A stretch of 64,000 nt of DNA from IMGVR_UViG_3300044633_000899:232331-296330, one strand, 5' to 3'. Positions 540 to 52,445 are shown, numbered from the stretch's first letter. Notes: generated from the letters alone by a model not told the origin. Translations and numbers: made by a program.

Positions 540-1847
540 ATGAGTAGACAACAATTTACGGCAAGAAATAATATTGGTAGTGTGTTAACATTTCAAAAGA
601 GTGGTGCGACCGCGTCTTTTGATCCTTTTGTTTCATTTAGTAGTGGTTCACGACGTGTTTCTTGGAAATTAGATAATGGTACAAATGTTACTCAAACCGC
701 AGGTAATGGTATTACTTATACTGGATTTACTTCAGATACTGGAATTAGGACAATACAAATGAAAGGTAATAGTTTTAGGGATATAAACTTTTTTAGATTA
801 GATAATGATAATTTATATGGTCATTTAGATCTAACCCAATTATCAGAGTTGAGTAATGTTTTTAGGGTGGATGGTAATATAAATTTAACCGGTATTACAC
901 ACGCGCCGTCATCACAAAATTTCTTACAATACCAAGCTAATAATTGTAAACTGACAGGAAATTTAGATTTAACACCATTATCTGGGTTAGGTGGTAGCTT
1001 TCAGGTTTCTAGTAATATAAATTTAACCGGTATTACACACGCGCCGTCATCACAAAATTTCTCACAATACATTGCTAATAATTGTAACCTAACCGGAAAT
1101 TTAGATTTAACACCATTGTCTGGGTTAGGTGGTGGGTTTTGGTTATATACAAACCCAAAATTAACTGGAATAACACACACACAATCATCACAAATTTTTA
1201 GTAATTATTACGCACAGTTTTGTAATCTAATAGGAATTTTAGATTTAACACCATTGTCTGGATTAGGTGGTGATATTAGAATTAATTCTAATACTGGTTT
1301 AACCAATGTAAACTTTACTATAAGTACACAAAACATAACAGCGTTAGCCTTGGACGGGTGTGACATAACGGGAGAAATAGATTTATCACCATTAACAAAA
1401 TTAGGCGCATCAAGCAGTGGTGTCACATTTAGTTGGGTGAGTTTACATACAAACCCAAACTTAACTAGTGTTATTTTCCCAAATACCAATCAGTTTTTTA
1501 AAAATGGTGTAGGGGGTGCCGAAGTGGTTAGCGTTTTTAGGTTATATGGTTGTAACTTAGATTACGTTGACTTTACCCCACTATCAGGTGCAACATTAGT
1601 GTCTGGTACAACACAAGGAAGACCAAGAATATCATTACGAGATAACAATATGTTAGCAGCAGATGTTAACCATATATTAGTTGATTTCAGTGGAAACACA
1701 ACATATAACCCAACAGGGTGGTCAAATGTAAATTTAAATATTGGAGGAACAAACGATCCCCCAGACTCATTTTCGGGTGGATATGATGGTTTAGCTGCAA
1801 TAAGTTTTTTAACGGGTTCACCGTATAATTGGATAATAACAACGTAA
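540..1847 (+). CDS. Leucine-rich-repeat-like beta-solenoid protein with 46-aa repeats, probable virion/receptor-binding accessory protein
   Basis: Repeated LxGxLDLTPLSGLGGxFxxxxNxNLTGITH units; lies directly after a fibre-like gene. Confidence 0.55.
   Translation: MSRQQFTARNNIGSVLTFQKSGATASFDPFVSFSSGSRRVSWKLDNGTNVTQTAGNGITYTGFTSDTGIRTIQMKGNSFRDINFFRLDNDNLYGHLDLTQLSELSNVFRVDGNINLTGITHAPSSQNFLQYQANNCKLTGNLDLTPLSGLGGSFQVSSNINLTGITHAPSSQNFSQYIANNCNLTGNLDLTPLSGLGGGFWLYTNPKLTGITHTQSSQIFSNYYAQFCNLIGILDLTPLSGLGGDIRINSNTGLTNVNFTISTQNITALALDGCDITGEIDLSPLTKLGASSSGVTFSWVSLHTNPNLTSVIFPNTNQFFKNGVGGAEVVSVFRLYGCNLDYVDFTPLSGATLVSGTTQGRPRISLRDNNMLAADVNHILVDFSGNTTYNPTGWSNVNLNIGGTNDPPDSFSGGYDGLAAISFLTGSPYNWIITT
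813..1395 (+). repeat. 138-bp (46-codon) intragenic tandem repeat, about 4-5 units
   Basis: taatataaatttaaccggtattacacacgcgccgtcatcacaaaatttct occurs at 875 and 1013 (period 138); atttagatttaacaccatt recurs at the same period. Confidence 0.85.
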
Positions 1848-6423: not shown

Positions 6424-6870
6424 TTAACCGATTACCATTAATTTTGGGTTGTAGTTTCTAACTGGGTTTGCGTCACTTATGTTAAACGTTTTGTCTAACC
6501 ACACTTTTATAATTGATTCTGTTTGTTCTGGTGTTAATTTAAAAAAATTTTCTAACACCATCCAAAATTCAGAATTGTTAATAAACATTTTTTTTGTCAA
6601 TAGATTAAAAACTATCAAATTGTCATTTGGTTTTTTGCGAAACAACATTAAATTAGATGATGTTTTACTTATAACCGTTTCTAAATCGTTATACAAATTT
6701 AAAAACTCAAACGGATTGTTGTCAAACCCTTTTGATATGATTGTGTCAATACTATTAAAATATATTAATTTATTCCACCCCTCATTTTTAATCTTATTTT
6801 GGATGATTTCTTTTTCACTTAAAGATTCATTTAATCTTTTGTACTGACTTTCGGATATAATAATTTTCAT
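6424..6870 (-). CDS. Variable-tail family protein, divergent member
   Basis: MKIIISESQYK leader; PFEFLNLYNDL matches the family motif PMDFLNLFNDL; WLD..FN motif followed by a tail of the same length ending IG. Confidence 0.85.
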   Translation of the reverse strand: MKIIISESQYKRLNESLSEKEIIQNKIKNEGWNKLIYFNSIDTIISKGFDNNPFEFLNLYNDLETVISKTSSNLMLFRKKPNDNLIVFNLLTKKMFINNSEFWMVLENFFKLTPEQTESIIKVWLDKTFNISDANPVRNYNPKLMVIG

Positions 6871-6874
6871 ATTG

Positions 6875-6881
6875 ATAAATA
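6875..6881 (-). promoter_or_regulatory. TATTTAT motif, putative late promoter (representative copy; about 22 copies upstream of genes)
   Basis: Coding-strand TATTTAT at 6401, 6875, 7346, 7832, 9391, 9875, 10346 (minus) and 12149, 13773, 15616, 21049, 23028, 35179, 38178, 41494, 46346, 47862, 48988, 51303, 51990, 52422, 61599 (plus), about 4-40 nt before start codons, mainly of structural genes. Confidence 0.7.
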
Positions 6882-6891
6882 TTCTATTTTT

Positions 6892-7341
6892 TCAATTTGT
6901 AGACCTCATCCAATTGTCATCAACACCAATTATCAATGGTATGACATCCCTTAAATTGTGGGTCAACCATTTCTGTATAAGTTTCTGTATATTAGTGTAG
7001 TTAAGACCAAAGTTACCTTCCAAAACTGACCAAATTTCATTATAATTAATATAAACCTCATCACTTTCTCTATCGTGAATGATAAAATTATGACCTTTTT
7101 TAAAACGATATAATGTCCAATATTCTTCTTCTTCACTCTGAACCGATTCCAGATCATTAAATAAGTTTAAGAAATCCATTGGTTCTTTAATGTCAAAAAT
7201 TTCAAGAGTTTTATCCAAGGACCCAACAATCTTTGTTACAGATTCAAAACCAACCTTTTTTATTAAACCCAATAATTTTTCTTTTAAAGAAACGTTTTCT
7301 TTAATTAGTTTGTATTGACTTTCGGTGATGATAATTTTCAT
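6892..7341 (-). CDS. Variable-tail family protein
   Basis: 149 aa, family core PMDFLNLFNDLESVQSEE; ends in the second repeat copy read as WMRSTN*. Confidence 0.9.
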   Translation of the reverse strand: MKIIITESQYKLIKENVSLKEKLLGLIKKVGFESVTKIVGSLDKTLEIFDIKEPMDFLNLFNDLESVQSEEEEYWTLYRFKKGHNFIIHDRESDEVYINYNEIWSVLEGNFGLNYTNIQKLIQKWLTHNLRDVIPLIIGVDDNWMRSTN

Positions 7342-7377
7342 ATTGATAAATATTCTAATTTTTTTAAATTGTAGATA

Positions 7378-7827
7378 TCATTCAATTTTTCCAATTACTT
7401 CCGTGCTGTTTGCGTAGATTCTGACTCCCCTTAAATTGTAGACCTCACCCAACCATATCTCTATAATTTTCTGTCTTTCAGAAAATTTAAGACCAAATTT
7501 ATCTTCCAATACTGACCAAATTTCATCAGAATTGATATAAACAGAATCATTTTTTCTATCGTAAACCATAAAGTTATGACCTTTTCTATAACGATACAAT
7601 GTCCAATTTTCATCTTCCTCACTCTGAACCGATTCCAAATCATTAAATAAATTTAAGAAATCCATCGGTTCTTTGACATCAAAGATTTCAAATGTTTTAT
7701 CCAAAGATCCAACAATCTTTGTTACAGATTTAAAACCAACTTTTTTTATTAAACCCAACAATTTTTCCTTTAAAGAAACGTTTTCTTTGATTAGTTTGTA
7801 TTGACTTTCGGATATAATAATTTTCAT
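7378..7827 (-). CDS. Variable-tail family protein
   Basis: 149 aa, family core; WLGEVYNLRGVR plus unique tail IYANSTEVIGKIE*. Confidence 0.9.
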   Translation of the reverse strand: MKIIISESQYKLIKENVSLKEKLLGLIKKVGFKSVTKIVGSLDKTFEIFDVKEPMDFLNLFNDLESVQSEEDENWTLYRYRKGHNFMVYDRKNDSVYINSDEIWSVLEDKFGLKFSERQKIIEIWLGEVYNLRGVRIYANSTEVIGKIE

Positions 7828-7862
7828 ATTGATAAATATTCTAATTTTTTAAATTGTAGACC

Positions 7863-9386
7863 TCATCCAGTAAAGAAATCCATTGGCATAAATACAAATT
7901 TAGGTGTGACTCCCCTTAAATTGTAGACCTCATCCAACCACCTCTCTGTAAGTTTTTGTATTTCAGAGTAGTTAAGACCAAATTTATCTTCCAAAACTGA
8001 CCAAATTTCATCATAATTGATATAAACATAATCCTTTTTTCTATCGTAAATCATTATATTATGATCTTTTTTATAACGAAATAATATCCAATTTTCTTTT
8101 TCTTCAGATTGGGTACCTTTCAAATCATTAAATAGATGTAAGAAATCCATCGGTTCTTTAATGTCAAAAATTTTAAATAAATTATCCAAGGATCCAACAA
8201 TTTTTGTTACAGATTCAAAACCAACTTTTTTGATTAAACCCAATAATTTTTCTTTTAAAGATATTGATTCATTTAATGGTTTTTTATTATCCTCTTTTTT
8301 TGTTTTTGAGATATATAAATCATTAACAAATTCCCAATTAACACAATTCCAAAAGTTTTTAATATATTCGTCACGTTTATTTTGATATTTTAAATAATAC
8401 GCGTGTTCCCAGACATCCAACCCCAACAATGGATAACCACCATCTTTAATGATATTCATTAATGGATTATCTTGATTTGGTGTGGACATAATTTTAAGTC
8501 TATTTGTTTTTGTTAAGACAAGCCAAACCCAACCAGAACCAAATCTATCTTTTGCAATTTGGTTAAACTCATCTTTCATCTTTTTTATATTACCATATTG
8601 TTTGGTAATTTTATCAAAAATTTCACCCTTTGGTATTTGTTTCTTTGGTGACAACATCTTCCAAAACAAAGCGTGGTTAAAAGCACCCCCAGCGTTGTTT
8701 CGTACTTTCTCATCAAATTTACTAATTGATTTTATAATATCTTCTAATTCAAGATCTTTATGTTTTTTTTCAGATAAAGCATCATTTAATTTTTTAACAT
8801 AACCTTTATAATGTTTGTTGTAATGAATATCCATCGTTTTTGGATCAACAAATTGTTTTAATGCGGAATATGAATATGGTAATTTTTCAATACCAATTTT
8901 TTTCATTTCCATAATAAACTCTTCTTTGATGTTTTCTTTTTCCGTTAAGAGAATTTGTTCTGAGATAAGATTAATTTTATTAACTATTTTTTCTGAACAC
9001 TCAAAAACCAATTGATTATAATCTGGGTATTCTTTTTCAAACATTTTTATTAATCTACCAGCAAAAGCGTTTGCCTCATCTTCATTTTGACCACCAATAT
9101 CTGGTCCTCGTTCTCTACCTAAAGAAAAACGTTGGTGTGCGTGAACCCACTCGTGAGCCAAGGTTCTCATAATGTCACGATTTAATCTATTTTTTGATAA
9201 AATTTTTAATGTACCGTCCATACTCTGACTACCAGTTGACATTTGACCCATTTTATCACCCAAAAACAAAATTGTTAAATCTTGATTAACAGGATAATGA
9301 TTACCTAAAAACTTGATAAAATCATTGTACATTTTTTTATCGTTAGCATCAAGTCCAGAATCATTATGTTTAATTGTGATTTTCAT
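7863..9386 (-). CDS. sodA: Tripartite fusion: HExxH zincin-like domain + Mn-type (Fe/Mn family) superoxide dismutase + variable-tail family domain
   Basis: TLAHEWVH...EDEANAFAG (aa ~75-110); SOD motifs LPYSYSAL, HYNKH, NNAGGAFNH, FGSGWVWL, NQDNP, DVWEHAYY (GG and NQD point to the Mn type); the last ~135 aa are a variable-tail domain. Confidence 0.9.
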   Translation of the reverse strand: MKITIKHNDSGLDANDKKMYNDFIKFLGNHYPVNQDLTILFLGDKMGQMSTGSQSMDGTLKILSKNRLNRDIMRTLAHEWVHAHQRFSLGRERGPDIGGQNEDEANAFAGRLIKMFEKEYPDYNQLVFECSEKIVNKINLISEQILLTEKENIKEEFIMEMKKIGIEKLPYSYSALKQFVDPKTMDIHYNKHYKGYVKKLNDALSEKKHKDLELEDIIKSISKFDEKVRNNAGGAFNHALFWKMLSPKKQIPKGEIFDKITKQYGNIKKMKDEFNQIAKDRFGSGWVWLVLTKTNRLKIMSTPNQDNPLMNIIKDGGYPLLGLDVWEHAYYLKYQNKRDEYIKNFWNCVNWEFVNDLYISKTKKEDNKKPLNESISLKEKLLGLIKKVGFESVTKIVGSLDNLFKIFDIKEPMDFLHLFNDLKGTQSEEKENWILFRYKKDHNIMIYDRKKDYVYINYDEIWSVLEDKFGLNYSEIQKLTERWLDEVYNLRGVTPKFVFMPMDFFTG

Positions 9387-9423
9387 AATTATAAATATCT
9401 AATGATTGTAAAATATAGTTTTA

Positions 9424-9870
9424 TTAAATCATAGATATCATCCAATCCCAATTCTGAAAGTTCTCAAAAACCCAAGTCGGTCTGGTTCTCTTTAAATTGT
9501 AGGTATCATCCAACCAATCCTTAATAAGGTTACTTATATCATAATAGTTTGTTAAATGTTTCTGTTCTAAAACTGACCAAATGTCACCATAATTGATATA
9601 AACAGCATCACTTCTTCTGTCGTGAATCATAATGTTATAACCTTTTTTATAACGATATAATGTCCAAGATGGTCTTTCCTCACTCTGAATTACATCCAAT
9701 TCATTAAATAAATTTAAGAAATCCATCGGTTCTTTGATATCCAAAATTTCAAGTGTTTTATCCAAGGATCCAACAATTTTTGTTGTGGACTTAAAACCAA
9801 TTTTTTTAACTAAACCTAGTAATTTTTCTTTAATCGATTTATATTGATTTTCGGTTATAATAATTTTCAT
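9424..9870 (-). CDS. Variable-tail family protein
   Basis: 148 aa, family core; WLDDTYNLKRTR plus unique tail ending WMISMI*. Confidence 0.9.
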   Translation of the reverse strand: MKIIITENQYKSIKEKLLGLVKKIGFKSTTKIVGSLDKTLEILDIKEPMDFLNLFNELDVIQSEERPSWTLYRYKKGYNIMIHDRRSDAVYINYGDIWSVLEQKHLTNYYDISNLIKDWLDDTYNLKRTRPTWVFENFQNWDWMISMI

Positions 9871-9891
9871 ATTGATAAATATTTCACTTTT

Positions 9892-10341
9892 TTAAATTGT
9901 GGTGTTGTGTATACCAACAATATGGTTATACGTTGTGATTCCCTTTAAATCATAGACCTCATCCAACCACGTTTCTACAAGGGTTGTAATGTCACCAAAG
10001 TTAATATCAAAATTATCTTCCAAAATTGTCCATATTTCGTCATAATTAATGAAAACATATTTAATTTTTCTATCGTAAATCATAAAATTATGACCTTTTT
10101 TATATCTATACAATACCCAATTTGGTTCTTCTTCACTCTGAACAACATCCAAATCATTAAATAAGTTCAAGAAATCCATTGGTTCTTTAATATCAAAGAT
10201 ATCAAAAGTTTTATCCAAAGACCCAACAACTCTTATCGTTGATTCAAATCCAACCTTTTTGATTAAACTCAATAATTTTTCTTTTAAAGAAACGTTTTCT
10301 TTGATTAGTTTGTATTGACTTTCGGTTATTATTATTCGCAT
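9892..10341 (-). CDS. Variable-tail family protein
   Basis: 149 aa, family core; WLDEVYDLKGIT plus unique tail TYNHIVGIHNTTI*. Confidence 0.9.
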   Translation of the reverse strand: MRIIITESQYKLIKENVSLKEKLLSLIKKVGFESTIRVVGSLDKTFDIFDIKEPMDFLNLFNDLDVVQSEEEPNWVLYRYKKGHNFMIYDRKIKYVFINYDEIWTILEDNFDINFGDITTLVETWLDEVYDLKGITTYNHIVGIHNTTI

Positions 10342-13794: not shown

Positions 13795-14211
13795 ATGAAA
13801 AAAATTTTAAGACTAACAGAAAACGATTTAACCCGTATCGTTAAACGAGTTATTCGTGAACAAGATGGTGAATCACATAATAAAATATCAGATGAAGATT
13901 TTGATTCTTTTTTAGATGTTTTATCACAATATGAATCAGGTGACATTACTTGGGATGACTTTTTAGAAAAAAGTGAAGCTATTGGTTCAAAATATGTGGT
14001 TGGACCAAAACCAAAATCAAACGTTTTTATTGGGTTGTCTAATCAAGTTGAAGAGTTTAATCAAAAGTTGTCAAACCATTATGATGACCTAATTAGAAAT
14101 TCTACGTTATTTGGTAATATTTATGATGCTTACGAATCTGGTGAATTAACTAACGATGAAGGGTTCACTCTATTGAAAATGATCCGTACGGTAGAATATA
14201 ACGACCGTTAA
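13795..14211 (+). CDS. Acidic protein with LTExDLxRIVxRVIxE leader, putative internal head protein
   Basis: MKKILRLTENDLTRIVKRVIREQ N-terminus shared with 47881 and 52024; own TATTTAT motif at 13773. Confidence 0.75.
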   Translation: MKKILRLTENDLTRIVKRVIREQDGESHNKISDEDFDSFLDVLSQYESGDITWDDFLEKSEAIGSKYVVGPKPKSNVFIGLSNQVEEFNQKLSNHYDDLIRNSTLFGNIYDAYESGELTNDEGFTLLKMIRTVEYNDR

Positions 14212-35428: not shown

Positions 35429-36100
35429 ATGTCTATTGATAAAAAAATATTAGAAGAAATTGCAAGGTTTAATAATATAAATAATTATATTTTAGAACAA
35501 GAAGATCCGAATATGATACCACCTGCGGATCCTAACGCAATGCCGCCTGCTGACCCGAATATGATGCCACCGGCCGACCCTAACGCGATGCCACCTGCTG
35601 ACCCAAATGCCGCACCACCAGCCGATCCGAACGCACCACCAGCAGCACCAACACCAATTGATGTTGAAGCAGACAAAGACGTTGAAGTTATTGGTGATGA
35701 TGAAAATGAAGAATTAGAAATAACTGATCTTGTTGATTCACAAAAAAGTATTGGTGAGAAACAAGACGAATATTTTGATAATTTATTTGCACAAATAAAA
35801 GGTCTTGAAGAAAAATTATCGGCAATGGATCAATTAGTTTCAAAGATAGATAACTTAGAAACAAACATTGAGAAAATGAGACCTAAAACACCACAAGAAA
35901 AACTTGAATTAAGAAGTTTGGATTCTGGACCATTTAATCAAAAACTATCAGATTTTTTCACAGACAAACAAGAAGACTTTGAAAAAACTGGAAAAGAATA
36001 TGTATTAACAACAGATGATGTTGAACAATATTCTGGAAACCAAATTAAAGACTCATTCACCGATTACGAAGACAATGAGGAAGACACTGAAATGATGTAA
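35429..36100 (+). CDS. Acidic coiled-coil protein with PPADPN repeats, possible scaffold/internal head protein
   Basis: Five PPADPN[AM]x units after a leader ending YILE|Q; acidic coiled-coil C-terminal half. Confidence 0.6.
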   Translation: MSIDKKILEEIARFNNINNYILEQEDPNMIPPADPNAMPPADPNMMPPADPNAMPPADPNAAPPADPNAPPAAPTPIDVEADKDVEVIGDDENEELEITDLVDSQKSIGEKQDEYFDNLFAQIKGLEEKLSAMDQLVSKIDNLETNIEKMRPKTPQEKLELRSLDSGPFNQKLSDFFTDKQEDFEKTGKEYVLTTDDVEQYSGNQIKDSFTDYEDNEEDTEMM

Positions 36101-47880: not shown

Positions 47881-48375
47881 ATGAAAAAAATAATTAGATT
47901 AACAGAATCAGATCTTACAAGAATTGTAAGACGTGTGATTAAAGAACAAGGTGTTAGAACTCTTGTACCATTAACAATTTCGGTACCATTTAGAAAAGAC
48001 TCAACAGGTCAAATGGTTTTTGACCCAAATTATCAAGTTAAAATTTTTGCAAAGAATGGTGAAGGGACAGAACAAACTAGTTTGGAAAACTACACAAAAA
48101 TTGTAGGTCTCCAAATAACAAGTGAGTATTTTGTGAATCCAGTTACTAAAAAAGATGCTGCAGGAAATATCGTAGGTTCTTTCTCAATCGGAAATCAAAA
48201 AAACCTTGGAACTTACTTGAAAAACCAAGTAGGAAAAACAACACCTTTTTCGGATCAAAGTATTTCAATAACTATAGGTCAAGTACCTTCTGGTTCAACA
48301 ATAGTATACGGTGGTGGAACAAAATTTGTAATGTACGACACTGGTGCTAAAGTAGCAACACCAACAAAACCATAA
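47881..48375 (+). CDS. Protein with LTExDLxRIV leader and C-terminal ATPTKP tag
   Basis: MKKIIRLTESDLTRIVRRVIKEQ; ends KVATPTKP*. Confidence 0.75.
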   Translation: MKKIIRLTESDLTRIVRRVIKEQGVRTLVPLTISVPFRKDSTGQMVFDPNYQVKIFAKNGEGTEQTSLENYTKIVGLQITSEYFVNPVTKKDAAGNIVGSFSIGNQKNLGTYLKNQVGKTTPFSDQSISITIGQVPSGSTIVYGGGTKFVMYDTGAKVATPTKP

Positions 48376-49463: not shown

Positions 49464-51302
49464 ATGGCAGAGAAAAAGATTTCATATACGGCTAGGGATT
49501 TCCAAACGATTAGAACGGAATTAATAAATTTTACACGAACGTATTATCCAGATTTAATCCAGAACTTTAATGATGCTGGTGTTTTTTCTGTTTTAATGGA
49601 TTTGAACGCGGCGGTAACTGATAATCTACAATTCCAAATAGATAGAAGTATTCAAGAAACGGTATTACAATACGCACAACAAAAATCATCAATTTATAAC
49701 ATAGCAAGAACATACGGATTAAAAATCCCTGGTCAACGACCTTCTGTTGCGTTAACTGATTTCTCAATTACGGTACCAGCGTTTGGTGATAAAGAAGATT
49801 TAAGATATTGTGGTATATTAAGACGAGGATCGCAAGTATCTGGTGCTGGACAACCATTTGAAACTGTTTATGATATTGATTTTGCATCACCATTAAATGG
49901 TGAGGGTTCACCAAATAGACTTAAAATACCAAATTTTGATTCAAACGGTAAAATTTTAAATTATACAATAACAAAAAGAGAGGTTGTTGTTAATGGGACA
50001 ACAAAGGTATTTAAGAGAGTTATTACACCAAATGATGTAAAACCTTATTTTGAATTATTCTTACCAGAAAAAAATGTTTTGGGAATAACAAGTGTTTTAT
50101 TAAAAGATGGTACACAATATACAACAATACCTGAACCACAAGAATTTCTTGGGTTGGATAACAGATGGTATGAAGTTAAAGCGTTGGCCGAAGATAGAGT
50201 GTTCATTGAGGACCCAACAAAGGTATCAGACCAACCTGGTGTTAAAGTAGGTAAATATATCACAACTAACACTAAATTCATTAGTGAATACACACCAGAA
50301 GGTTATCTAAAAATGACATTTGGTGGTGGTAATGTTTCGGCTGAAGAACAATTAAGAGAATTTACAAGAACTGGTAATTCATTTGATTTAAACAAATACT
50401 CAAACAATCTAGCACTAGGTGCTGCGTTAAAGTCAAACTCTACTTTATTTATTCAATATAGAATTGGTGGTGGACAATCAACAAACCTTGGATCAAATGT
50501 GATTACACAGATTGGTACGGTTTCGTTTTTTGTTAATGGACCATCAGAAACGATTAATAAAAGTGTTATTAATACATTAAGATGTAATAACGTGACAGCA
50601 GCAATAGGAGGGGCGAACGCACCAACAACTGAAGACGTAAGACAAATGGTTTCATTTAATTTTGCGGCACAAAACAGAGCGGTAACAATTAATGATTATG
50701 AATCAATAATAAAAACAATGCCATCACAATTTGGTGCACCAGCAAAAGTTGCGATAACTGAAGAAAACAATAAGATAAAAGTTAAAATGTTATCTTATGA
50801 TAGTAATGGTAATTTAACTGATACAATATCAAACACACTAAAAAGTAATTTATCAAATTATTTATCAAACTATAGAATGATAAATGATTATATCTCAATT
50901 GAGAGTGCAAACCCAATTGATCTATCTGTTGATGTTGATGTTGTATTAGACGCGACACAAAACCAAGGTGCTATCATATCAAAATTAATTAATATTGTAA
51001 CAACATTCTTTAGTCCAACAAATAGACAATTAGGACAAAACGTTAACGTATCTGAATTAAGAAGAATTATCCAGAACGAAAATGGAATTGTGAGTATTTC
51101 GGATTTAAGGTTTTTTAATAAGGTTGGGGGTCAGTATTCTTCATATCAGACATCACAAAGGTATTCCGATTTATCAACAAAACAAATTGAATTAATTAAT
51201 GATACGATATTTGCGGAACCAACACAGACTTATCAAGTTAGGTTTCCGAATAAGGATATTAATGTTAGGGTAATAAACTTAAAAACTGTGAATTTTTCAT
51301 AA
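49464..51302 (+). CDS. Baseplate wedge protein gp6/J-like
   Basis: RDFQTIR, FIQYRIGGGQSTN, AAIGGANA, QNRAVTINDY. Confidence 0.88.
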   Translation: MAEKKISYTARDFQTIRTELINFTRTYYPDLIQNFNDAGVFSVLMDLNAAVTDNLQFQIDRSIQETVLQYAQQKSSIYNIARTYGLKIPGQRPSVALTDFSITVPAFGDKEDLRYCGILRRGSQVSGAGQPFETVYDIDFASPLNGEGSPNRLKIPNFDSNGKILNYTITKREVVVNGTTKVFKRVITPNDVKPYFELFLPEKNVLGITSVLLKDGTQYTTIPEPQEFLGLDNRWYEVKALAEDRVFIEDPTKVSDQPGVKVGKYITTNTKFISEYTPEGYLKMTFGGGNVSAEEQLREFTRTGNSFDLNKYSNNLALGAALKSNSTLFIQYRIGGGQSTNLGSNVITQIGTVSFFVNGPSETINKSVINTLRCNNVTAAIGGANAPTTEDVRQMVSFNFAAQNRAVTINDYESIIKTMPSQFGAPAKVAITEENNKIKVKMLSYDSNGNLTDTISNTLKSNLSNYLSNYRMINDYISIESANPIDLSVDVDVVLDATQNQGAIISKLINIVTTFFSPTNRQLGQNVNVSELRRIIQNENGIVSISDLRFFNKVGGQYSSYQTSQRYSDLSTKQIELINDTIFAEPTQTYQVRFPNKDINVRVINLKTVNFS

Positions 51303-51313
51303 TATTTATTGAT

Positions 51314-51832
51314 ATGAAAATAATTATAACCGAAAATCAATACAAGTTAATTAAAGAAAACATTTCTTTAAAAGAAAAATTAAAGGACTTAATCAAAAAG
51401 GTTGGTTTTGAATCAATGGTAAGAGTTGTTGGATCCTTGGATAAAACGTTTGAAATCTTTGATGTCAAAGAACCGATGGATTTCTTAAATTTATTTAATG
51501 ATTTGGAATCGGTTCAGAGTGAAGAACGTGAAGATTGGACGTTATATCGTTATAAAAAAGGACATAATTTTATAGTTTACAATAGAAAAAATGATTATGT
51601 TCATATCAATTATGATGAAATTTGGTCAGTTTTAGAAGACAATTTTGGACTTAACTACTCTGAAACACAGAAACTTACAAAGAGATGGTTGGATGAGGTC
51701 TACAATTTAAGGGGAGTCACACCTTATATTTTTGACTTAACATCAACAGGGTTAAGGTTGGATGAGGTCTACAATTTAAGGGGAGTCACACCTCGCGAAA
51801 ATATATCGTTCGATATGTCTCGGATTGGATGA
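51314..51832 (+). CDS. Variable-tail family protein with duplicated tail unit
   Basis: 172 aa; family core; ...WLDEVYNLRGVT-PYIFDLTSTGLR-LDEVYNLRGVT-PRENISFDMSR-IG*. Confidence 0.9.
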   Translation: MKIIITENQYKLIKENISLKEKLKDLIKKVGFESMVRVVGSLDKTFEIFDVKEPMDFLNLFNDLESVQSEEREDWTLYRYKKGHNFIVYNRKNDYVHINYDEIWSVLEDNFGLNYSETQKLTKRWLDEVYNLRGVTPYIFDLTSTGLRLDEVYNLRGVTPRENISFDMSRIG

Positions 51833-51856
51833 GGTCTACAATTTAAGGGGAGTCAC
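51687..51856 (+). repeat. CRISPR-like repeat-spacer mini-array inside and beyond a CDS (3 x 34 bp; 35- and 33-nt unrelated spacers)
   Basis: GGTTGGATGAGGTCTACAATTTAAGGGGAGTCAC at 51687-51720 and 51756-51789 (identical) and 51823-51856 (1 mismatch); no cas genes in the window. Confidence 0.92.
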
Positions 51857-52023
51857 CGTCTATTGTAATATTTCCACAAAAAAGACATTTTTGTGAAACA
51901 ACACCAATCTTTTACTTTTTCACAAACAAGATTATTCTTTGAAAATAGGAAATAAACTTAAAAAGTGTAAATTTTTCATAACATCAATATATTTATATTG
52001 TAAATAATAAATAAAAAAAAACG

Positions 52024-52326
52024 ATGAAAAAAACAGTTAGATTAACAGAAAGAGATTTAACAAGAATTGTTAAAAGAGTAATTAAAGAAGGTAGTGAAAA
52101 CATTGAAGATTTACGACACGAAAGATTAGACCTACTAAAAAGAATTAAAAGATTTGCAAACAAATCTTATAATTTAGAAAACACGGTAGATATTGATTTA
52201 GAAAACACGGTAGATATGGATGATGACGATATGTATGGTGTTGGTGAATGTGTTGAAACTGCAGACGAACTGCTCAAAGCCTTGAAAAGAATTGGTGAAG
52301 ATCACGATATTAACGATTTTGAATAA
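52024..52326 (+). CDS. Acidic protein with LTExDLxRIV leader
   Basis: MKKTVRLTERDLTRIVKRVIKEG; internal 24-bp duplication (LENTVDID/LENTVDMD). Confidence 0.75.
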   Translation: MKKTVRLTERDLTRIVKRVIKEGSENIEDLRHERLDLLKRIKRFANKSYNLENTVDIDLENTVDMDDDDMYGVGECVETADELLKALKRIGEDHDINDFE

Positions 52327-52368: not shown

Positions 52369-52445
52369 ATTTCTTTTACTTTTTCACAAACAAGATTATT
52401 CTTTGAAAATAGGAAATAAACTATTTATCAAAAAAGAAGGAATTA

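What the first reader, a model, noticed from the sequence alone, without database searches (positions are those of the whole stretch)
51688..51792. The repeat also resembles a Bacteroidota type VI-B CRISPR repeat: possible crRNA mimic or mini-array
Seen: taken as GTTGGATGAGGTCTACAATTTAAGGGGAGTCACACC the unit is 36 nt with 31-33-nt spacers, and most spacers in the family begin ACC. Established (recalled, needs alignment): Cas13b repeats are 36 nt, begin GTTG, end CAAC, often contain TTT.AAGGG, and have ~30-nt spacers; phages are known to carry cas-less mini-arrays and solitary repeat RNAs that inhibit CRISPR. Inference: the gene ends may double as, or derive from, CRISPR-like RNA. Against this: the inner hairpin is weak, and the repeat encodes a motif conserved at protein level in the divergent paralogue.
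Basis: partly seen in the sequence, partly recalled or inferred. Interest (0 to 1): 0.6.

Follow-up and report, generated by a model that had tools for sequence, protein, structure and literature searches.

The report
Phage gene ends carrying CRISPR mini-arrays
The flagged repeat is a real three-repeat CRISPR-type mini-array in a roughly 296-kb phage genome. Its first repeat doubles as the last 12 codons of a multi-copy phage gene. Its sequence resembles the repeats used by the RNA-cutting Cas13b system, a type not yet reported on phages in two published surveys.

Summary
Two identical 36-nt repeats lie at 51688-51723 and 51757-51792, and a degenerate third lies at 51824-51859. They are separated by unrelated spacers of 33 and 31 nt.

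Comparative data show a CRISPR-type array. Related phage contigs carry up to 6 repeats at the same site. In total there are 44 distinct arrays and 66 unique spacers, 59 of them 29-32 nt long. Terminal repeats are degenerate, and spacer turnover occurs at the gene-proximal end. One pair of contigs has 100% and 99.5% identical flanks and differs only in the first spacer.

The first repeat is always the in-frame 3' end (LDEVYNLRGVTP) of a real, expanded phage gene family. The variable protein tails are translated spacers.

The repeat matches published Flavobacterium and Prevotella Cas13b repeats at 21-23 of 36 positions in register (shuffle p <= 1e-4). Type II-C and V-A control repeats match at only 8-16. 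The repeat lacks the stable inner hairpin of Cas13b repeats.

I found no cas gene, no host array with this repeat and no protospacer.

Best reading: these are VI-B-derived phage mini-arrays, co-transcribed with the gene. They most likely act on host Cas13b as crRNA decoys, and the spacers are inserted by a Cas1-Cas2 integrase. The function is inferred, not shown. This is a new variant of known viral mini-arrays and solitary repeat units.

The parts
51314..51832 (+). Family gene ORF (172 aa). The conserved protein ends at 51724. Residues beyond that are translated spacer 1, repeat 2 and spacer 2. The TGA stop (51830-51832) lies inside repeat 3.
   Evidence: The body shows a coding pattern of conservation (codon positions 1/2/3 = 0.75/0.83/0.70). 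369 word-matched homologues and 805 clusters at 50% identity.
51688..51723 (+). Repeat 1, 36 nt, proximal to the gene (leader end). It is in frame and encodes LDEVYNLRGVTP.
51724..51756 (+). Spacer 1, 33 nt, unique.
   Evidence: No match elsewhere except in the same array in near-identical contigs.
51757..51792 (+). Repeat 2, identical to repeat 1.
51793..51823 (+). Spacer 2, 31 nt, unique.
51824..51859 (+). Repeat 3, the degenerate terminal repeat (4 mismatches; it ends CACCGT). The same degenerate end closes the arrays at this site in L047 and L019.
6424..10341 (-). Tandem cluster of six paralogues of the same gene family. One (7863-9386) is fused to an Fe/Mn superoxide dismutase. In four of the six (genes 9892-10341, 7863-9386, 7378-7827 and 6892-7341) the gene end is followed by a short spacer and then a degenerate or truncated repeat copy that abuts the next gene's start region; this was read in detail for 7863-9386, 7378-7827 and 6892-7341. 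The other two (9424-9870 and 6424-6870) have a decayed repeat and no downstream copy was documented.
7903..7938 (-). Perfect repeat at the in-frame end of ORF 7863-9386. It is followed by a 31-nt spacer (7872-7902) and a repeat truncated after about 23 nt (7849-7871), which contains the stop codon.
7418..7453 (-). Repeat with 4 mismatches at the end of ORF 7378-7827. A degenerate partial copy follows at about 7364-7383.
9932..9967 (-). Decaying repeat (5 mismatches; it ends CACAAC) at the end of ORF 9892-10341.
6891..6913 (-). Truncated repeat copy after ORF 6892-7341. That gene's own in-frame repeat carries a 6-nt deletion.

Best explanation
The region is a CRISPR-type mini-array carried by a T4-like jumbo phage, probably of Flavobacteriia. 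It is one of at least six such loci in this roughly 296-kb genome.

Shown:
- The repeats are 36 nt and identical, and the spacers are unique and about 30 nt long.
- The distal repeat is degenerate.
- In related phages, spacers change at the end next to the gene.
- The first repeat is the in-frame last 12 codons of a real, multi-copy phage gene, so the gene serves as the array's leader and the variable protein tails are translated spacers.
- The repeat is significantly similar to published Cas13b (type VI-B) repeats.

Inferred:
- Spacers are inserted by a Cas1-Cas2 integrase that measures a 36-bp repeat and a 30-31-bp spacer. In Flavobacterium columnare, the type II-C Cas1 serves the VI-B array in trans (PMC8092290).
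- The array is transcribed as the 3' part of the gene's mRNA.
- Cas13b crRNAs have the guide first and the repeat second. Each family mRNA would therefore end in a ready-made crRNA-like unit: a gene-derived 'guide' followed by repeat 1.

I think the most likely function is to occupy host Cas13b with harmless crRNA-like RNAs. This would resemble RNA anti-CRISPRs and the 'extraneous crRNA' described for VI-B arrays. The extra spacer-repeat units would then add decoy dosage, or arise as a by-product of integration.
For: Array anatomy:
- Searches give 44 distinct arrays and 66 unique spacers, 59 of them 29-32 nt long, with up to 6 repeats per array.
- The same syntenic site holds entirely different spacer sets in the window, L047, L019 and L075.

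Polarised turnover:
- L008 and L009 have flanks that are 100% and 99.5% identical. They share three distal spacers and differ only in the gene-proximal one.
- L106 versus L087, and L012 versus L002, show the same polarity.
- Terminal repeats are degenerate.

Constraint on the repeat:
- The repeat is more conserved than the gene. Gene pairs about 60% identical in the body are 76% identical in the repeat. Third codon positions score 0.81 in the repeat against 0.70 in the body (p = 0.012).
- Genes with arrays have a median of 1.5 mismatches to the consensus repeat, even when the body is only 0.67-0.75 identical to the family consensus.
- More distant family members carry their own variant repeat, and the downstream copies match that variant (L126, L127, L131-L137). 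This is what duplication of the first repeat at each integration would produce.

VI-B similarity:
- The repeat matches three published Cas13b repeats at 21-23 of 36 positions in register (p <= 1e-4). Controls match at 8-16.

In favour of the decoy reading:
- 36 of 99 non-redundant genes carry one full repeat, one spacer and a truncated repeat. In a guide-then-repeat system only the gene-derived unit is intact in that arrangement.
- Copy number per genome is high.
- No target was found for any spacer.
- Over-expressing an extraneous crRNA lowered Cas13b phage defence about 1000-fold (PMC13187072).
- Phage solitary repeats are proven RNA anti-CRISPRs for other CRISPR types (PMC10651486).
Against: - No cas gene was found in the 64-kb window or in about 870 kb of related loci.
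- No bacterial array with this repeat core was found in 185,579 species genomes or 241 million metagenome records. The Cas partner is therefore unidentified.
- The repeat lacks the stable two-stem hairpin of Cas13b repeats: -2.1 to -5.3 kcal/mol with insignificant z-scores, against -10.9 to -12.2 for genuine ones. Binding to Cas13b is therefore unproven.
- A pure decoy needs no spacers, yet spacers turn over.
- Essentially no spacer matches the phage's own sampled genome: 0 full matches among 66, and one partial match of 20 nt. This is what selection against self-targeting by active crRNAs would produce, and it favours the guide hypothesis.
- The first two-thirds of the repeat also carries a protein-level constraint, so part of its conservation has nothing to do with RNA.
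Confidence: 0.45

Rival explanations
1. The arrays are working guide arrays. They are processed by host Cas13b into active crRNAs that the phage uses against competing phages, other mobile elements or host transcripts, as in the archaeal virus mini-arrays.
For: - Arrays of up to 5 spacers are flanked by full repeats.
- Spacer turnover is rapid and polarised.
- Self-matching spacers are absent from about 870 kb of own and related phage DNA, as expected if self-targeting crRNAs are lethal.
- Spacers have more open reading frames than their shuffles (1.8 against 1.4), which suggests they come from coding DNA.
- There is precedent in PMC11656645 and PMC7162821.
Against: - No protospacer was found in related phages, in GenBank phages, or (for 5 spacers) in IMG/VR. 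Known viral mini-arrays mostly target relatives.
- Many genes carry a spacer followed only by a truncated repeat, which cannot give a Cas13b crRNA.
- Cas13 collateral RNase activity would also damage the carrier phage. This point rests on established knowledge, not on a test here.
- The repeat hairpin is weak.
Confidence: 0.2
2. The phage encodes its own effector, a Cas13b-like or novel protein, and perhaps an integrase, in the roughly 60% of the genome I could not read. The dispersed arrays would then serve that phage system.
For: - No host array with this repeat exists in very large collections.
- Huge phages are known to carry CRISPR-Cas systems and compact arrays (PMC7162821).
- The repeat has co-evolved with a phage gene over a deep family.
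Against: - None of 44 distinct arrays, each with 3-7 kb of flanks, sits next to a recognisable cas gene or a large protein with two HEPN motifs.
- The window has none either.
- Arrays are scattered rather than clustered beside one locus.
Confidence: 0.12
3. The arrays are a neutral by-product. The conserved gene end happens to look like a host leader-repeat junction, so the host's Cas1-Cas2 occasionally inserts spacers there (ectopic or 'neo-CRISPR' integration). The RNA would have no function.
For: - The protein motif is older than the arrays. The most divergent homologues keep the motif W-x-x-E/D-x-Y/F-x-L/I/V but have no downstream copy and no VI-B-like sequence.
- Translated tails are random.
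- No targets and no cas genes were found.
Against: - 78 of 99 genes keep at least one intact repeat plus a spacer.
- Repeats are kept nearly perfect, including at synonymous sites, while gene bodies diverge to about 60-70% identity.
- The arrangement persists across several deep sub-lineages, each with its own repeat variant.
Confidence: 0.13
4. It is not CRISPR at all. The repeats would be recombination scars, slippage products or a protein-level tandem repeat at the C-terminus of the family.
For: - The first repeat is coding.
- In tandem gene clusters the second copy abuts the next gene's start region at a TTTAA microhomology, so some copies were shaped by recombination.
Against: - Spacers are unrelated to each other and to family genes, and are tightly sized (59 of 66 are 29-32 nt).
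- Downstream repeats fall in any of three reading frames, two of which contain stop codons, so they are not selected as protein.
- Polarity and terminal degeneracy fit CRISPR adaptation.
Confidence: 0.05

Closest known systems
Virus-borne CRISPR mini-arrays (Faure et al. 2019; Medvedeva et al. 2019; reviewed in PMC11656645) and the compact cas-less arrays of huge phages (PMC7162821)
   Same: - Short arrays on a viral genome with no adjacent cas genes.
- Spacers vary between close relatives.
- Presumed use of Cas proteins supplied in trans.
   Different: - Known mini-arrays have repeats identical to the host's array, and their spacers mostly hit related viruses. Here no host array with the repeat was found and no relative is targeted.
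- Here there are many arrays per genome.
- Each array starts inside the coding end of a paralogous gene.
Solitary repeat units / RNA anti-CRISPRs (Racr; PMC10651486) and the VI-B 'extraneous crRNA' (PMC13187072)
   Same: - A phage-encoded CRISPR repeat with a non-immune 'guide', in high dosage and behind a promoter.
- In the VI-B guide-then-repeat layout, the first repeat plus upstream sequence forms a crRNA-like unit. When over-expressed, such a unit titrates Cas13b.
   Different: - Racrs are non-coding and solitary. Here the repeat is translated and is usually followed by real spacers.
- The Racr survey found solitary repeats for every CRISPR type except type VI.
- Binding to Cas13b is untested here.
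Type VI-B (Cas13b) CRISPR arrays of Flavobacterium and Prevotella (repeats in PMC5395568 Table 4 and in bioRxiv 10.1101/2023.03.10.532141, which cites Cox et al. 2017; adaptation in trans in PMC8092290)
   Same: - 36-nt repeat and roughly 30-nt spacers.
- 5' GTTGG, a central TTT-AAGGG, and a 3' CACAAC in sister clades.
- 21-23 of 36 positions identical in register.
- Transcription from the leader end is plausible.
   Different: - No cas13b, csx27 or csx28 was found.
- The window's repeat ends CACACC.
- The inner stem (CCCUU/AAGGG) is lost and the fold is weak.
- The leader is a protein-coding gene.
Ectopic ('neo-CRISPR') spacer integration at repeat-like sites
   Same: A sequence outside a canonical array becomes a repeat because the integrase duplicates it when inserting a spacer.
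   Different: Here the arrangement is conserved, multi-copy, and maintained at nucleotide level across a large phage gene family. It is not a rare one-off event.

Membership tests
CRISPR array (generic) | Near-identical direct repeats of 23-47 nt separated by unique spacers of similar length | tested here: met
   36-nt repeats and 66 unique spacers, 59 of them 29-32 nt.
CRISPR array (generic) | Polarised spacer gain at one (leader) end, and a degenerate distal repeat | tested here: met
   L008 versus L009 (flanks 100% and 99.5% identical), L106 versus L087, and L012 versus L002 all differ at the gene-proximal end. Terminal repeats carry 1-7 mismatches.
CRISPR array (generic) | Non-coding AT-rich leader and nearby cas genes | tested here: not met
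   The leader is a coding gene. No cas gene was found in the window or in the flanks of the arrays. About 60% of the phage genome was not readable.
Type VI-B (Cas13b) repeat | 36-nt repeat with roughly 30-nt spacers, GTTG at the 5' end and CAAC at the 3' end | tested here: inconclusive
   Repeat length, spacer length and 5' GTTGG are met. The 3' end is CACC in the window but CAAC in sister clades such as L051, L049 and L127.
Type VI-B (Cas13b) repeat | Sequence similarity to authenticated Cas13b repeats beyond chance | tested here: met
   21-23 of 36 positions in register against F. columnare, F. branchiophilum and Prevotella sp. repeats (p <= 1e-4 in 20,000 shuffles). II-C and V-A controls match at 8-16. 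Genuine VI-B repeats match each other at 22-29 (sources). No Rfam CRISPR-DR family matched.
Type VI-B (Cas13b) repeat | Stable repeat hairpin with a terminal stem and an inner stem | tested here: not met
   Phage repeats fold at -2.1 to -5.3 kcal/mol with z-scores from +1.75 to -1.4. Genuine repeats fold at -10.9 to -12.2 with z-scores from -2.5 to -3.7. Only a partial terminal stem remains.
Type VI-B (Cas13b) repeat | Association with cas13b, in cis or in the host with the same repeat | tested here: not met
   No bacterial array with the repeat core was found in the species-representative genomes or the metagenome collection; every hit is phage-like. I had no Cas13b sequence to search with, so absence from the whole phage genome could not be tested.
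Viral mini-array (inter-virus conflict type) | Repeats identical to the host array, and spacers that target related viruses | tested here: not met
   No host array was found. None of 66 spacers fully matches anything in 867 kb of related phage DNA. No hits in GenBank phages or, for 5 spacers, in IMG/VR.
RNA anti-CRISPR / solitary repeat unit | A repeat-like RNA expressed by the phage that binds Cas proteins and lowers immunity | not testable with these tools
   Only the anatomy fits: many gene ends carry one intact repeat, and there is a VI-B precedent (PMC13187072).

The most novel reading that the evidence does not exclude
A large phage gene family has turned its own C-terminal coding sequence into a Cas13b-type CRISPR repeat. 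Every family mRNA would then be a built-in crRNA decoy that soaks up host Cas13b. Every gene end would also be a decoy leader-repeat junction that draws the host's Cas1-Cas2 integrase away from the bacterial array. Together these would form a two-level RNA/DNA anti-CRISPR written inside protein-coding genes. The arrays we see would be the footprints of captured integration events.
Probability: 0.2. Interest if true: 0.9.

Novelty: new variant of a known kind. Interest (0 to 1): 0.75.

Why it matters
Phage-borne mini-arrays and solitary repeats are known. However, the two published surveys cited here found none of type VI on viruses or plasmids (PMC10651486, PMC11656645). This family would fill that gap.

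It also shows an arrangement I could not find described: the repeat nearest the leader is translated as the conserved end of a protein, so one 36-nt stretch is under both protein-level and nucleic-acid-level constraint. The arrangement is maintained in many copies per genome across a deep family of freshwater jumbo phages.

It offers a natural test of three questions:
- Can Cas13b be titrated by phage crRNA mimics?
- Can CRISPR integrases act on phage DNA during infection?
- Can new CRISPR repeats arise from, or become fused to, coding sequence?

Tried and rejected
- **Rfam, all families, permissive threshold, over 51200-52100:** no CRISPR-DR or other credible hit.
- **Megablast of 13 kb around the site, and tblastn of the family protein, against GenBank phages:** no match.
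- **Pfam, PHROGs and NCBIfam on the family protein:** nothing.
- **Structure of the family protein:** the AlphaFold2 model has pLDDT 74.8. Foldseek against the PDB, VIA-align wide and a profile search against PDB sequences gave no convincing fold (best Z 3.8). The protein's function stays unknown.
- **Protospacer searches:**
  - Local BLAST of 42 and then 66 spacers against 640 and then 867 kb of related phage DNA gave only a 20-nt partial hit, in the same sense as the ORF it lies in.
  - One array searched against GenBank phages gave only chance-level hits. A second query used wrong coordinates and is void.
  - Exact 22-23-mers of five spacers in IMG/VR returned only the arrays themselves.
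- **Host-array searches by degenerate repeat pattern:** the only genome hit is a 1.8-kb fragment of the same phage, binned into a Flavobacterium MAG. All 50 metagenome hits are phage-like, with at most 5 repeats.
- **Leader-repeat hairpin, as in host VI-B arrays:** a pairing is predicted, but it is no more stable than in shuffles (z = +0.4). Inconclusive.
- **Strand bias of spacers, from open frames and base composition:** no clear signal.
- **Anti-repeat or tracrRNA-like complement of the repeat in the window:** none. All minus-strand copies are gene ends.
- **Simple tandem duplication:** rejected, because the spacers are unrelated to each other.
- **Protein-level tandem repeat:** rejected, because downstream copies fall in all three reading frames.

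Full report
**What is at the coordinates**

The window reads, on the plus strand:
- a 36-nt unit at 51688-51723;
- 33 unrelated bases;
- the identical unit at 51757-51792;
- 31 unrelated bases;
- a third copy at 51824-51859 that differs at its first base and last three bases.

The 31-nt core occurs five times in the window at up to 3 mismatches, where shuffles give none. The first copy is in frame at the end of ORF 51314-51832 and encodes LDEVYNLRGVTP. The ORF then reads through spacer 1, repeat 2 and spacer 2, and stops at a TGA inside repeat 3.

**Genomic setting**

The window is the last 64 kb of a 296-kb IMG/VR contig. It encodes a tail sheath, a baseplate wedge protein, a family-B DNA polymerase, a ribonucleotide reductase, a DnaB-like helicase and an SNF2 helicase. 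A related contig (locus L070) has a T4 gp20-type portal with an intein, and another locus from the window's contig (L040) has three tandem C5-cytosine methyltransferases.

The nearest isolates by baseplate protein are Flavobacterium myophages, at 26% identity. A 1.8-kb fragment of this phage was binned into an uncultured Flavobacterium MAG. The element is therefore a jumbo myophage. A host within Flavobacteriia is likely but not proven.

**Why I call it a CRISPR-type array**

An exact 25-mer of the repeat occurs in 42 IMG/VR stretches, and a degenerate version in 50 metagenome stretches.

At the same syntenic site as in the window (baseplate wedge gene, then family gene, then array, then a gene of about 1800 aa), the content differs between contigs:
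- L047 carries six repeats with five unique spacers of 29-30 nt, and the same degenerate terminal repeat as the window.
- L019 carries one spacer and L075 carries two others.
- The flanks are 92-99% identical, while no spacer is shared.

Over all loci there are 44 distinct arrays and 66 unique spacers. Of these spacers, 59 are 29-32 nt long, with the mode at 31.

Turnover is polarised:
- L008 and L009 are 100% identical over 1 kb upstream and 99.5% identical over 600 nt downstream. They share three distal spacers and differ only in the spacer next to the gene.
- L106 versus L087, and L012 versus L002, behave the same way.

Identical repeats, tightly sized unique spacers, a degenerate far end and change at the near end are the signature of Cas1-Cas2 spacer integration. 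I know of no other process that produces this combination.

**The gene attached to every array**

The upstream ORF belongs to a real protein family:
- In 100 non-redundant genes from the fetched loci, the gene body shows the coding pattern of conservation. Codon position 2 is most conserved and position 3 least (0.75, 0.83 and 0.70 for positions 1, 2 and 3).
- A word-based search finds 369 homologues.
- A profile search finds 805 clusters at 50% identity.
- The family has no Pfam, PHROG or NCBIfam match and no recognisable fold.

The residues that follow LDEVYNLRGVTP are hypervariable. There are 94 different tails among 107 proteins. They end in VG-stop, in WMRSTI-stop, or in a second in-frame LDEVYNLRGVTP. 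These are simply the three reading frames of the next repeat. The tails are therefore translated spacers.

Of 99 genes examined:
- 42 have two or more full repeats;
- 36 have one repeat, one spacer and a truncated repeat that runs into the next gene's start region;
- 21 have a solitary, decayed repeat.

The minus-strand cluster at 6424-10341 in the window is of the second and third kinds.

**Two layers of constraint on the repeat**

Where arrays exist, the repeat is much better conserved than the gene:
- Gene pairs about 60% identical in the body are 76% identical in the repeat.
- Third codon positions are more conserved in the repeat than in the body (0.81 against 0.70, p = 0.012).
- Genes that carry arrays have nearly perfect repeats even when the gene body is only 0.67-0.75 identical to the family consensus.

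At the same time, distant homologues keep the motif W-[LV]-x-[ED]-[VT]-[YF]-[NG]-[LI] through conservative amino-acid changes. The first two-thirds of the repeat therefore also serves the protein. In the AlphaFold2 model the last helix ends at W125-L126, and residues 128-137 fall below pLDDT 50.

More distant members such as L126, L127 and L131-L137 carry their own variant repeats. In each case the downstream copies match that gene's variant, again with 29-31-nt spacers. This is expected if the first repeat is copied at each insertion.

The three most divergent members I fetched (L128-L130) keep the protein motif. They have no downstream copy and none of the VI-B-like 3' half. The protein motif therefore appears older than the arrays. 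Whether a CRISPR repeat was fused onto it, or the coding sequence evolved towards a repeat, remains open.

**Which CRISPR type**

I took authentic repeats from papers rather than from memory:
- Flavobacterium columnare and F. branchiophilum 36-nt repeats with 29-30-nt spacers, together with their II-C and V-A repeats as controls (PMC5395568 Table 4). That table does not label the subtypes; the VI-B, II-C and V-A labels are mine. For F. columnare they follow PMC8092290, which describes its two 36-nt loci as VI-B and II-C. For F. branchiophilum they rest on recalled literature and on close similarity to the F. columnare repeats.
- The Prevotella sp. Cas13b repeat (bioRxiv 10.1101/2023.03.10.532141, citing Cox et al. 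2017).

Results:
- The phage repeat and its close variants match the three VI-B repeats at 21-23 of 36 positions, without gaps and in register (p <= 1e-4 by shuffling).
- They match the controls at 11-16, and the more distant L126 variant drops to 8 against one control.
- The VI-B repeats match each other at 22-29.

Shared features are the 5' GTTGG, the central TTT-AAGGG and the 3' CACA-C. Sister clades end in the canonical CACAAC.

Against membership:
- The phage repeats fold at only -2.1 to -5.3 kcal/mol, with no significant z-score. The genuine repeats fold at -10.9 to -12.2.
- The inner stem is gone.
- Rfam gives no hit.
- No cas13b was found.

I therefore say that the repeat is VI-B-like, and probably of VI-B descent. 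I do not file it as a proven Cas13b repeat.

**What I could not find**

- No cas gene lies in the window, in the other fetched pieces of this genome, or in the flanks of the arrays in related contigs. About 60% of the 296-kb genome was out of reach.
- No bacterial array with this repeat core turned up in 185,579 species genomes or in the metagenome collection. Every hit is phage-like, with at most 5 repeats in those two collections; the longest array, 6 repeats, is in an IMG/VR viral contig.
- No spacer has a convincing target.
- The near-total absence of matches to the phage's own sampled DNA is itself informative. Either the phage's own, probably methylated, DNA is not sampled for spacers, or self-matching spacers are removed by selection.

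**How it most likely works**

*Shown:* the array anatomy, polarised turnover, in-frame fusion to a multi-copy gene, nucleotide-level maintenance of the repeat, and similarity to VI-B repeats.

*Inferred:*
- A Cas1-Cas2 integrase that measures 36 bp and about 30 bp inserts the spacers. In F. columnare the type II-C Cas1 serves the VI-B array in trans despite different repeats and leaders, and VI-B arrays are transcribed from the leader end (PMC8092290).
- The array is transcribed with the gene. In L126 a terminator-like GC-rich hairpin followed by a T-run comes after the last repeat.
- Cas13b crRNAs have the guide first and the repeat second. Each family mRNA would therefore end in a crRNA-like unit whose guide comes from the gene.

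In Porphyromonas gingivalis, such an 'extraneous crRNA' is normally blocked by a leader-repeat hairpin. When over-expressed, it lowers Cas13b phage defence about 1000-fold (PMC13187072).

I therefore favour a decoy role against host Cas13b, akin to RNA anti-CRISPRs (PMC10651486). The spacers would add further harmless crRNAs or reflect integration as a side effect. My estimates:
- That it is a CRISPR-type array: about 0.85.
- That it is of VI-B lineage: about 0.6.
- That it specifically has the decoy function: about 0.35-0.45.

The main rivals are active guide arrays, a phage-encoded effector, and neutral ectopic integration. Each is listed with its test in the Rival explanations section.

**Novelty**

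Cas-less viral mini-arrays, compact arrays in huge phages and solitary repeat anti-CRISPRs are established (PMC11656645, PMC7162821, PMC10651486). What I did not find described:
- A type VI-like repeat on a phage. The Racr survey found solitary repeats for all types except VI, and a plasmid survey found all types except VI.
- A leader-proximal repeat that is translated as the conserved end of a protein.
- A repeat with no cognate host array.
- Many such gene-attached arrays per genome, across a deep phage gene family.

I rate it a new variant of a known kind, and of high interest to CRISPR and phage biologists.

Noticed in passing
window 51314-51360 and 6424-10341 (-); related loci L107, L102, L052, L122: The N-terminus MKIIITESQYK..E of the family is shared by otherwise unrelated ORFs in these phages. 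It resembles a T4-type capsid-targeting signal with prohead-protease sites (I/L-x-E), which would make these proteins packaged and injected. This is inference only.
   Followed up: no
window 7863-9386 (-): A 507-aa ORF joins an N-terminal region with an HExxH motif and a complete Fe/Mn superoxide dismutase (Pfam E = 6e-40 and 4e-22) to the C-terminal half of the family, including a perfect repeat.
   Followed up: partly
window 13795-14211, 47881-48375, 52024-52326 (+): A second small paralogous family (MKK..RLTE.DLTRIV...) with conserved upstream regions (family D7). No repeat is attached to it.
   Followed up: no
window 51900-51955 and 52372-52425 (+): An intergenic element of about 50 nt (CTTTTACTTTTTCACAAACAAGATTATTCTTTGAAAATAGGAAATAAAC) occurs twice, once after the array and once before the 1812-aa gene. 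It is promoter-like and is also conserved in L047 and L075.
   Followed up: no
L040:4723-7255 (same phage genome, outside the window): Three tandem C5-cytosine DNA methyltransferase genes (Pfam E = 1e-43 to 1e-51). The phage DNA is probably heavily methylated, which may bear on which DNA is sampled for spacers.
   Followed up: partly
L070:6734-9835 (-): A T4 gp20-like portal protein interrupted by an intein splicing domain.
   Followed up: no
window 35504-35647 (+) and 802-1410 (+): A Pro/Ala-rich coding repeat with a 24-nt period, and a 138-nt tandem repeat inside ORF 540-1847. Neither was examined.
   Followed up: no
L040:225-244 versus spacer 3 of L029/L072: The first 20 nt of one spacer are identical to a stretch of an SbcC-like ORF of the window's phage. 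The match then breaks off, and it is in the same sense as the ORF. This is the only spacer with any similarity to phage DNA.
   Followed up: partly
L135, L136: The C-terminal module of about 55 aa, together with its array, also occurs behind different N-terminal regions. The module and the repeat, rather than the whole gene, seem to be the conserved unit.
   Followed up: no
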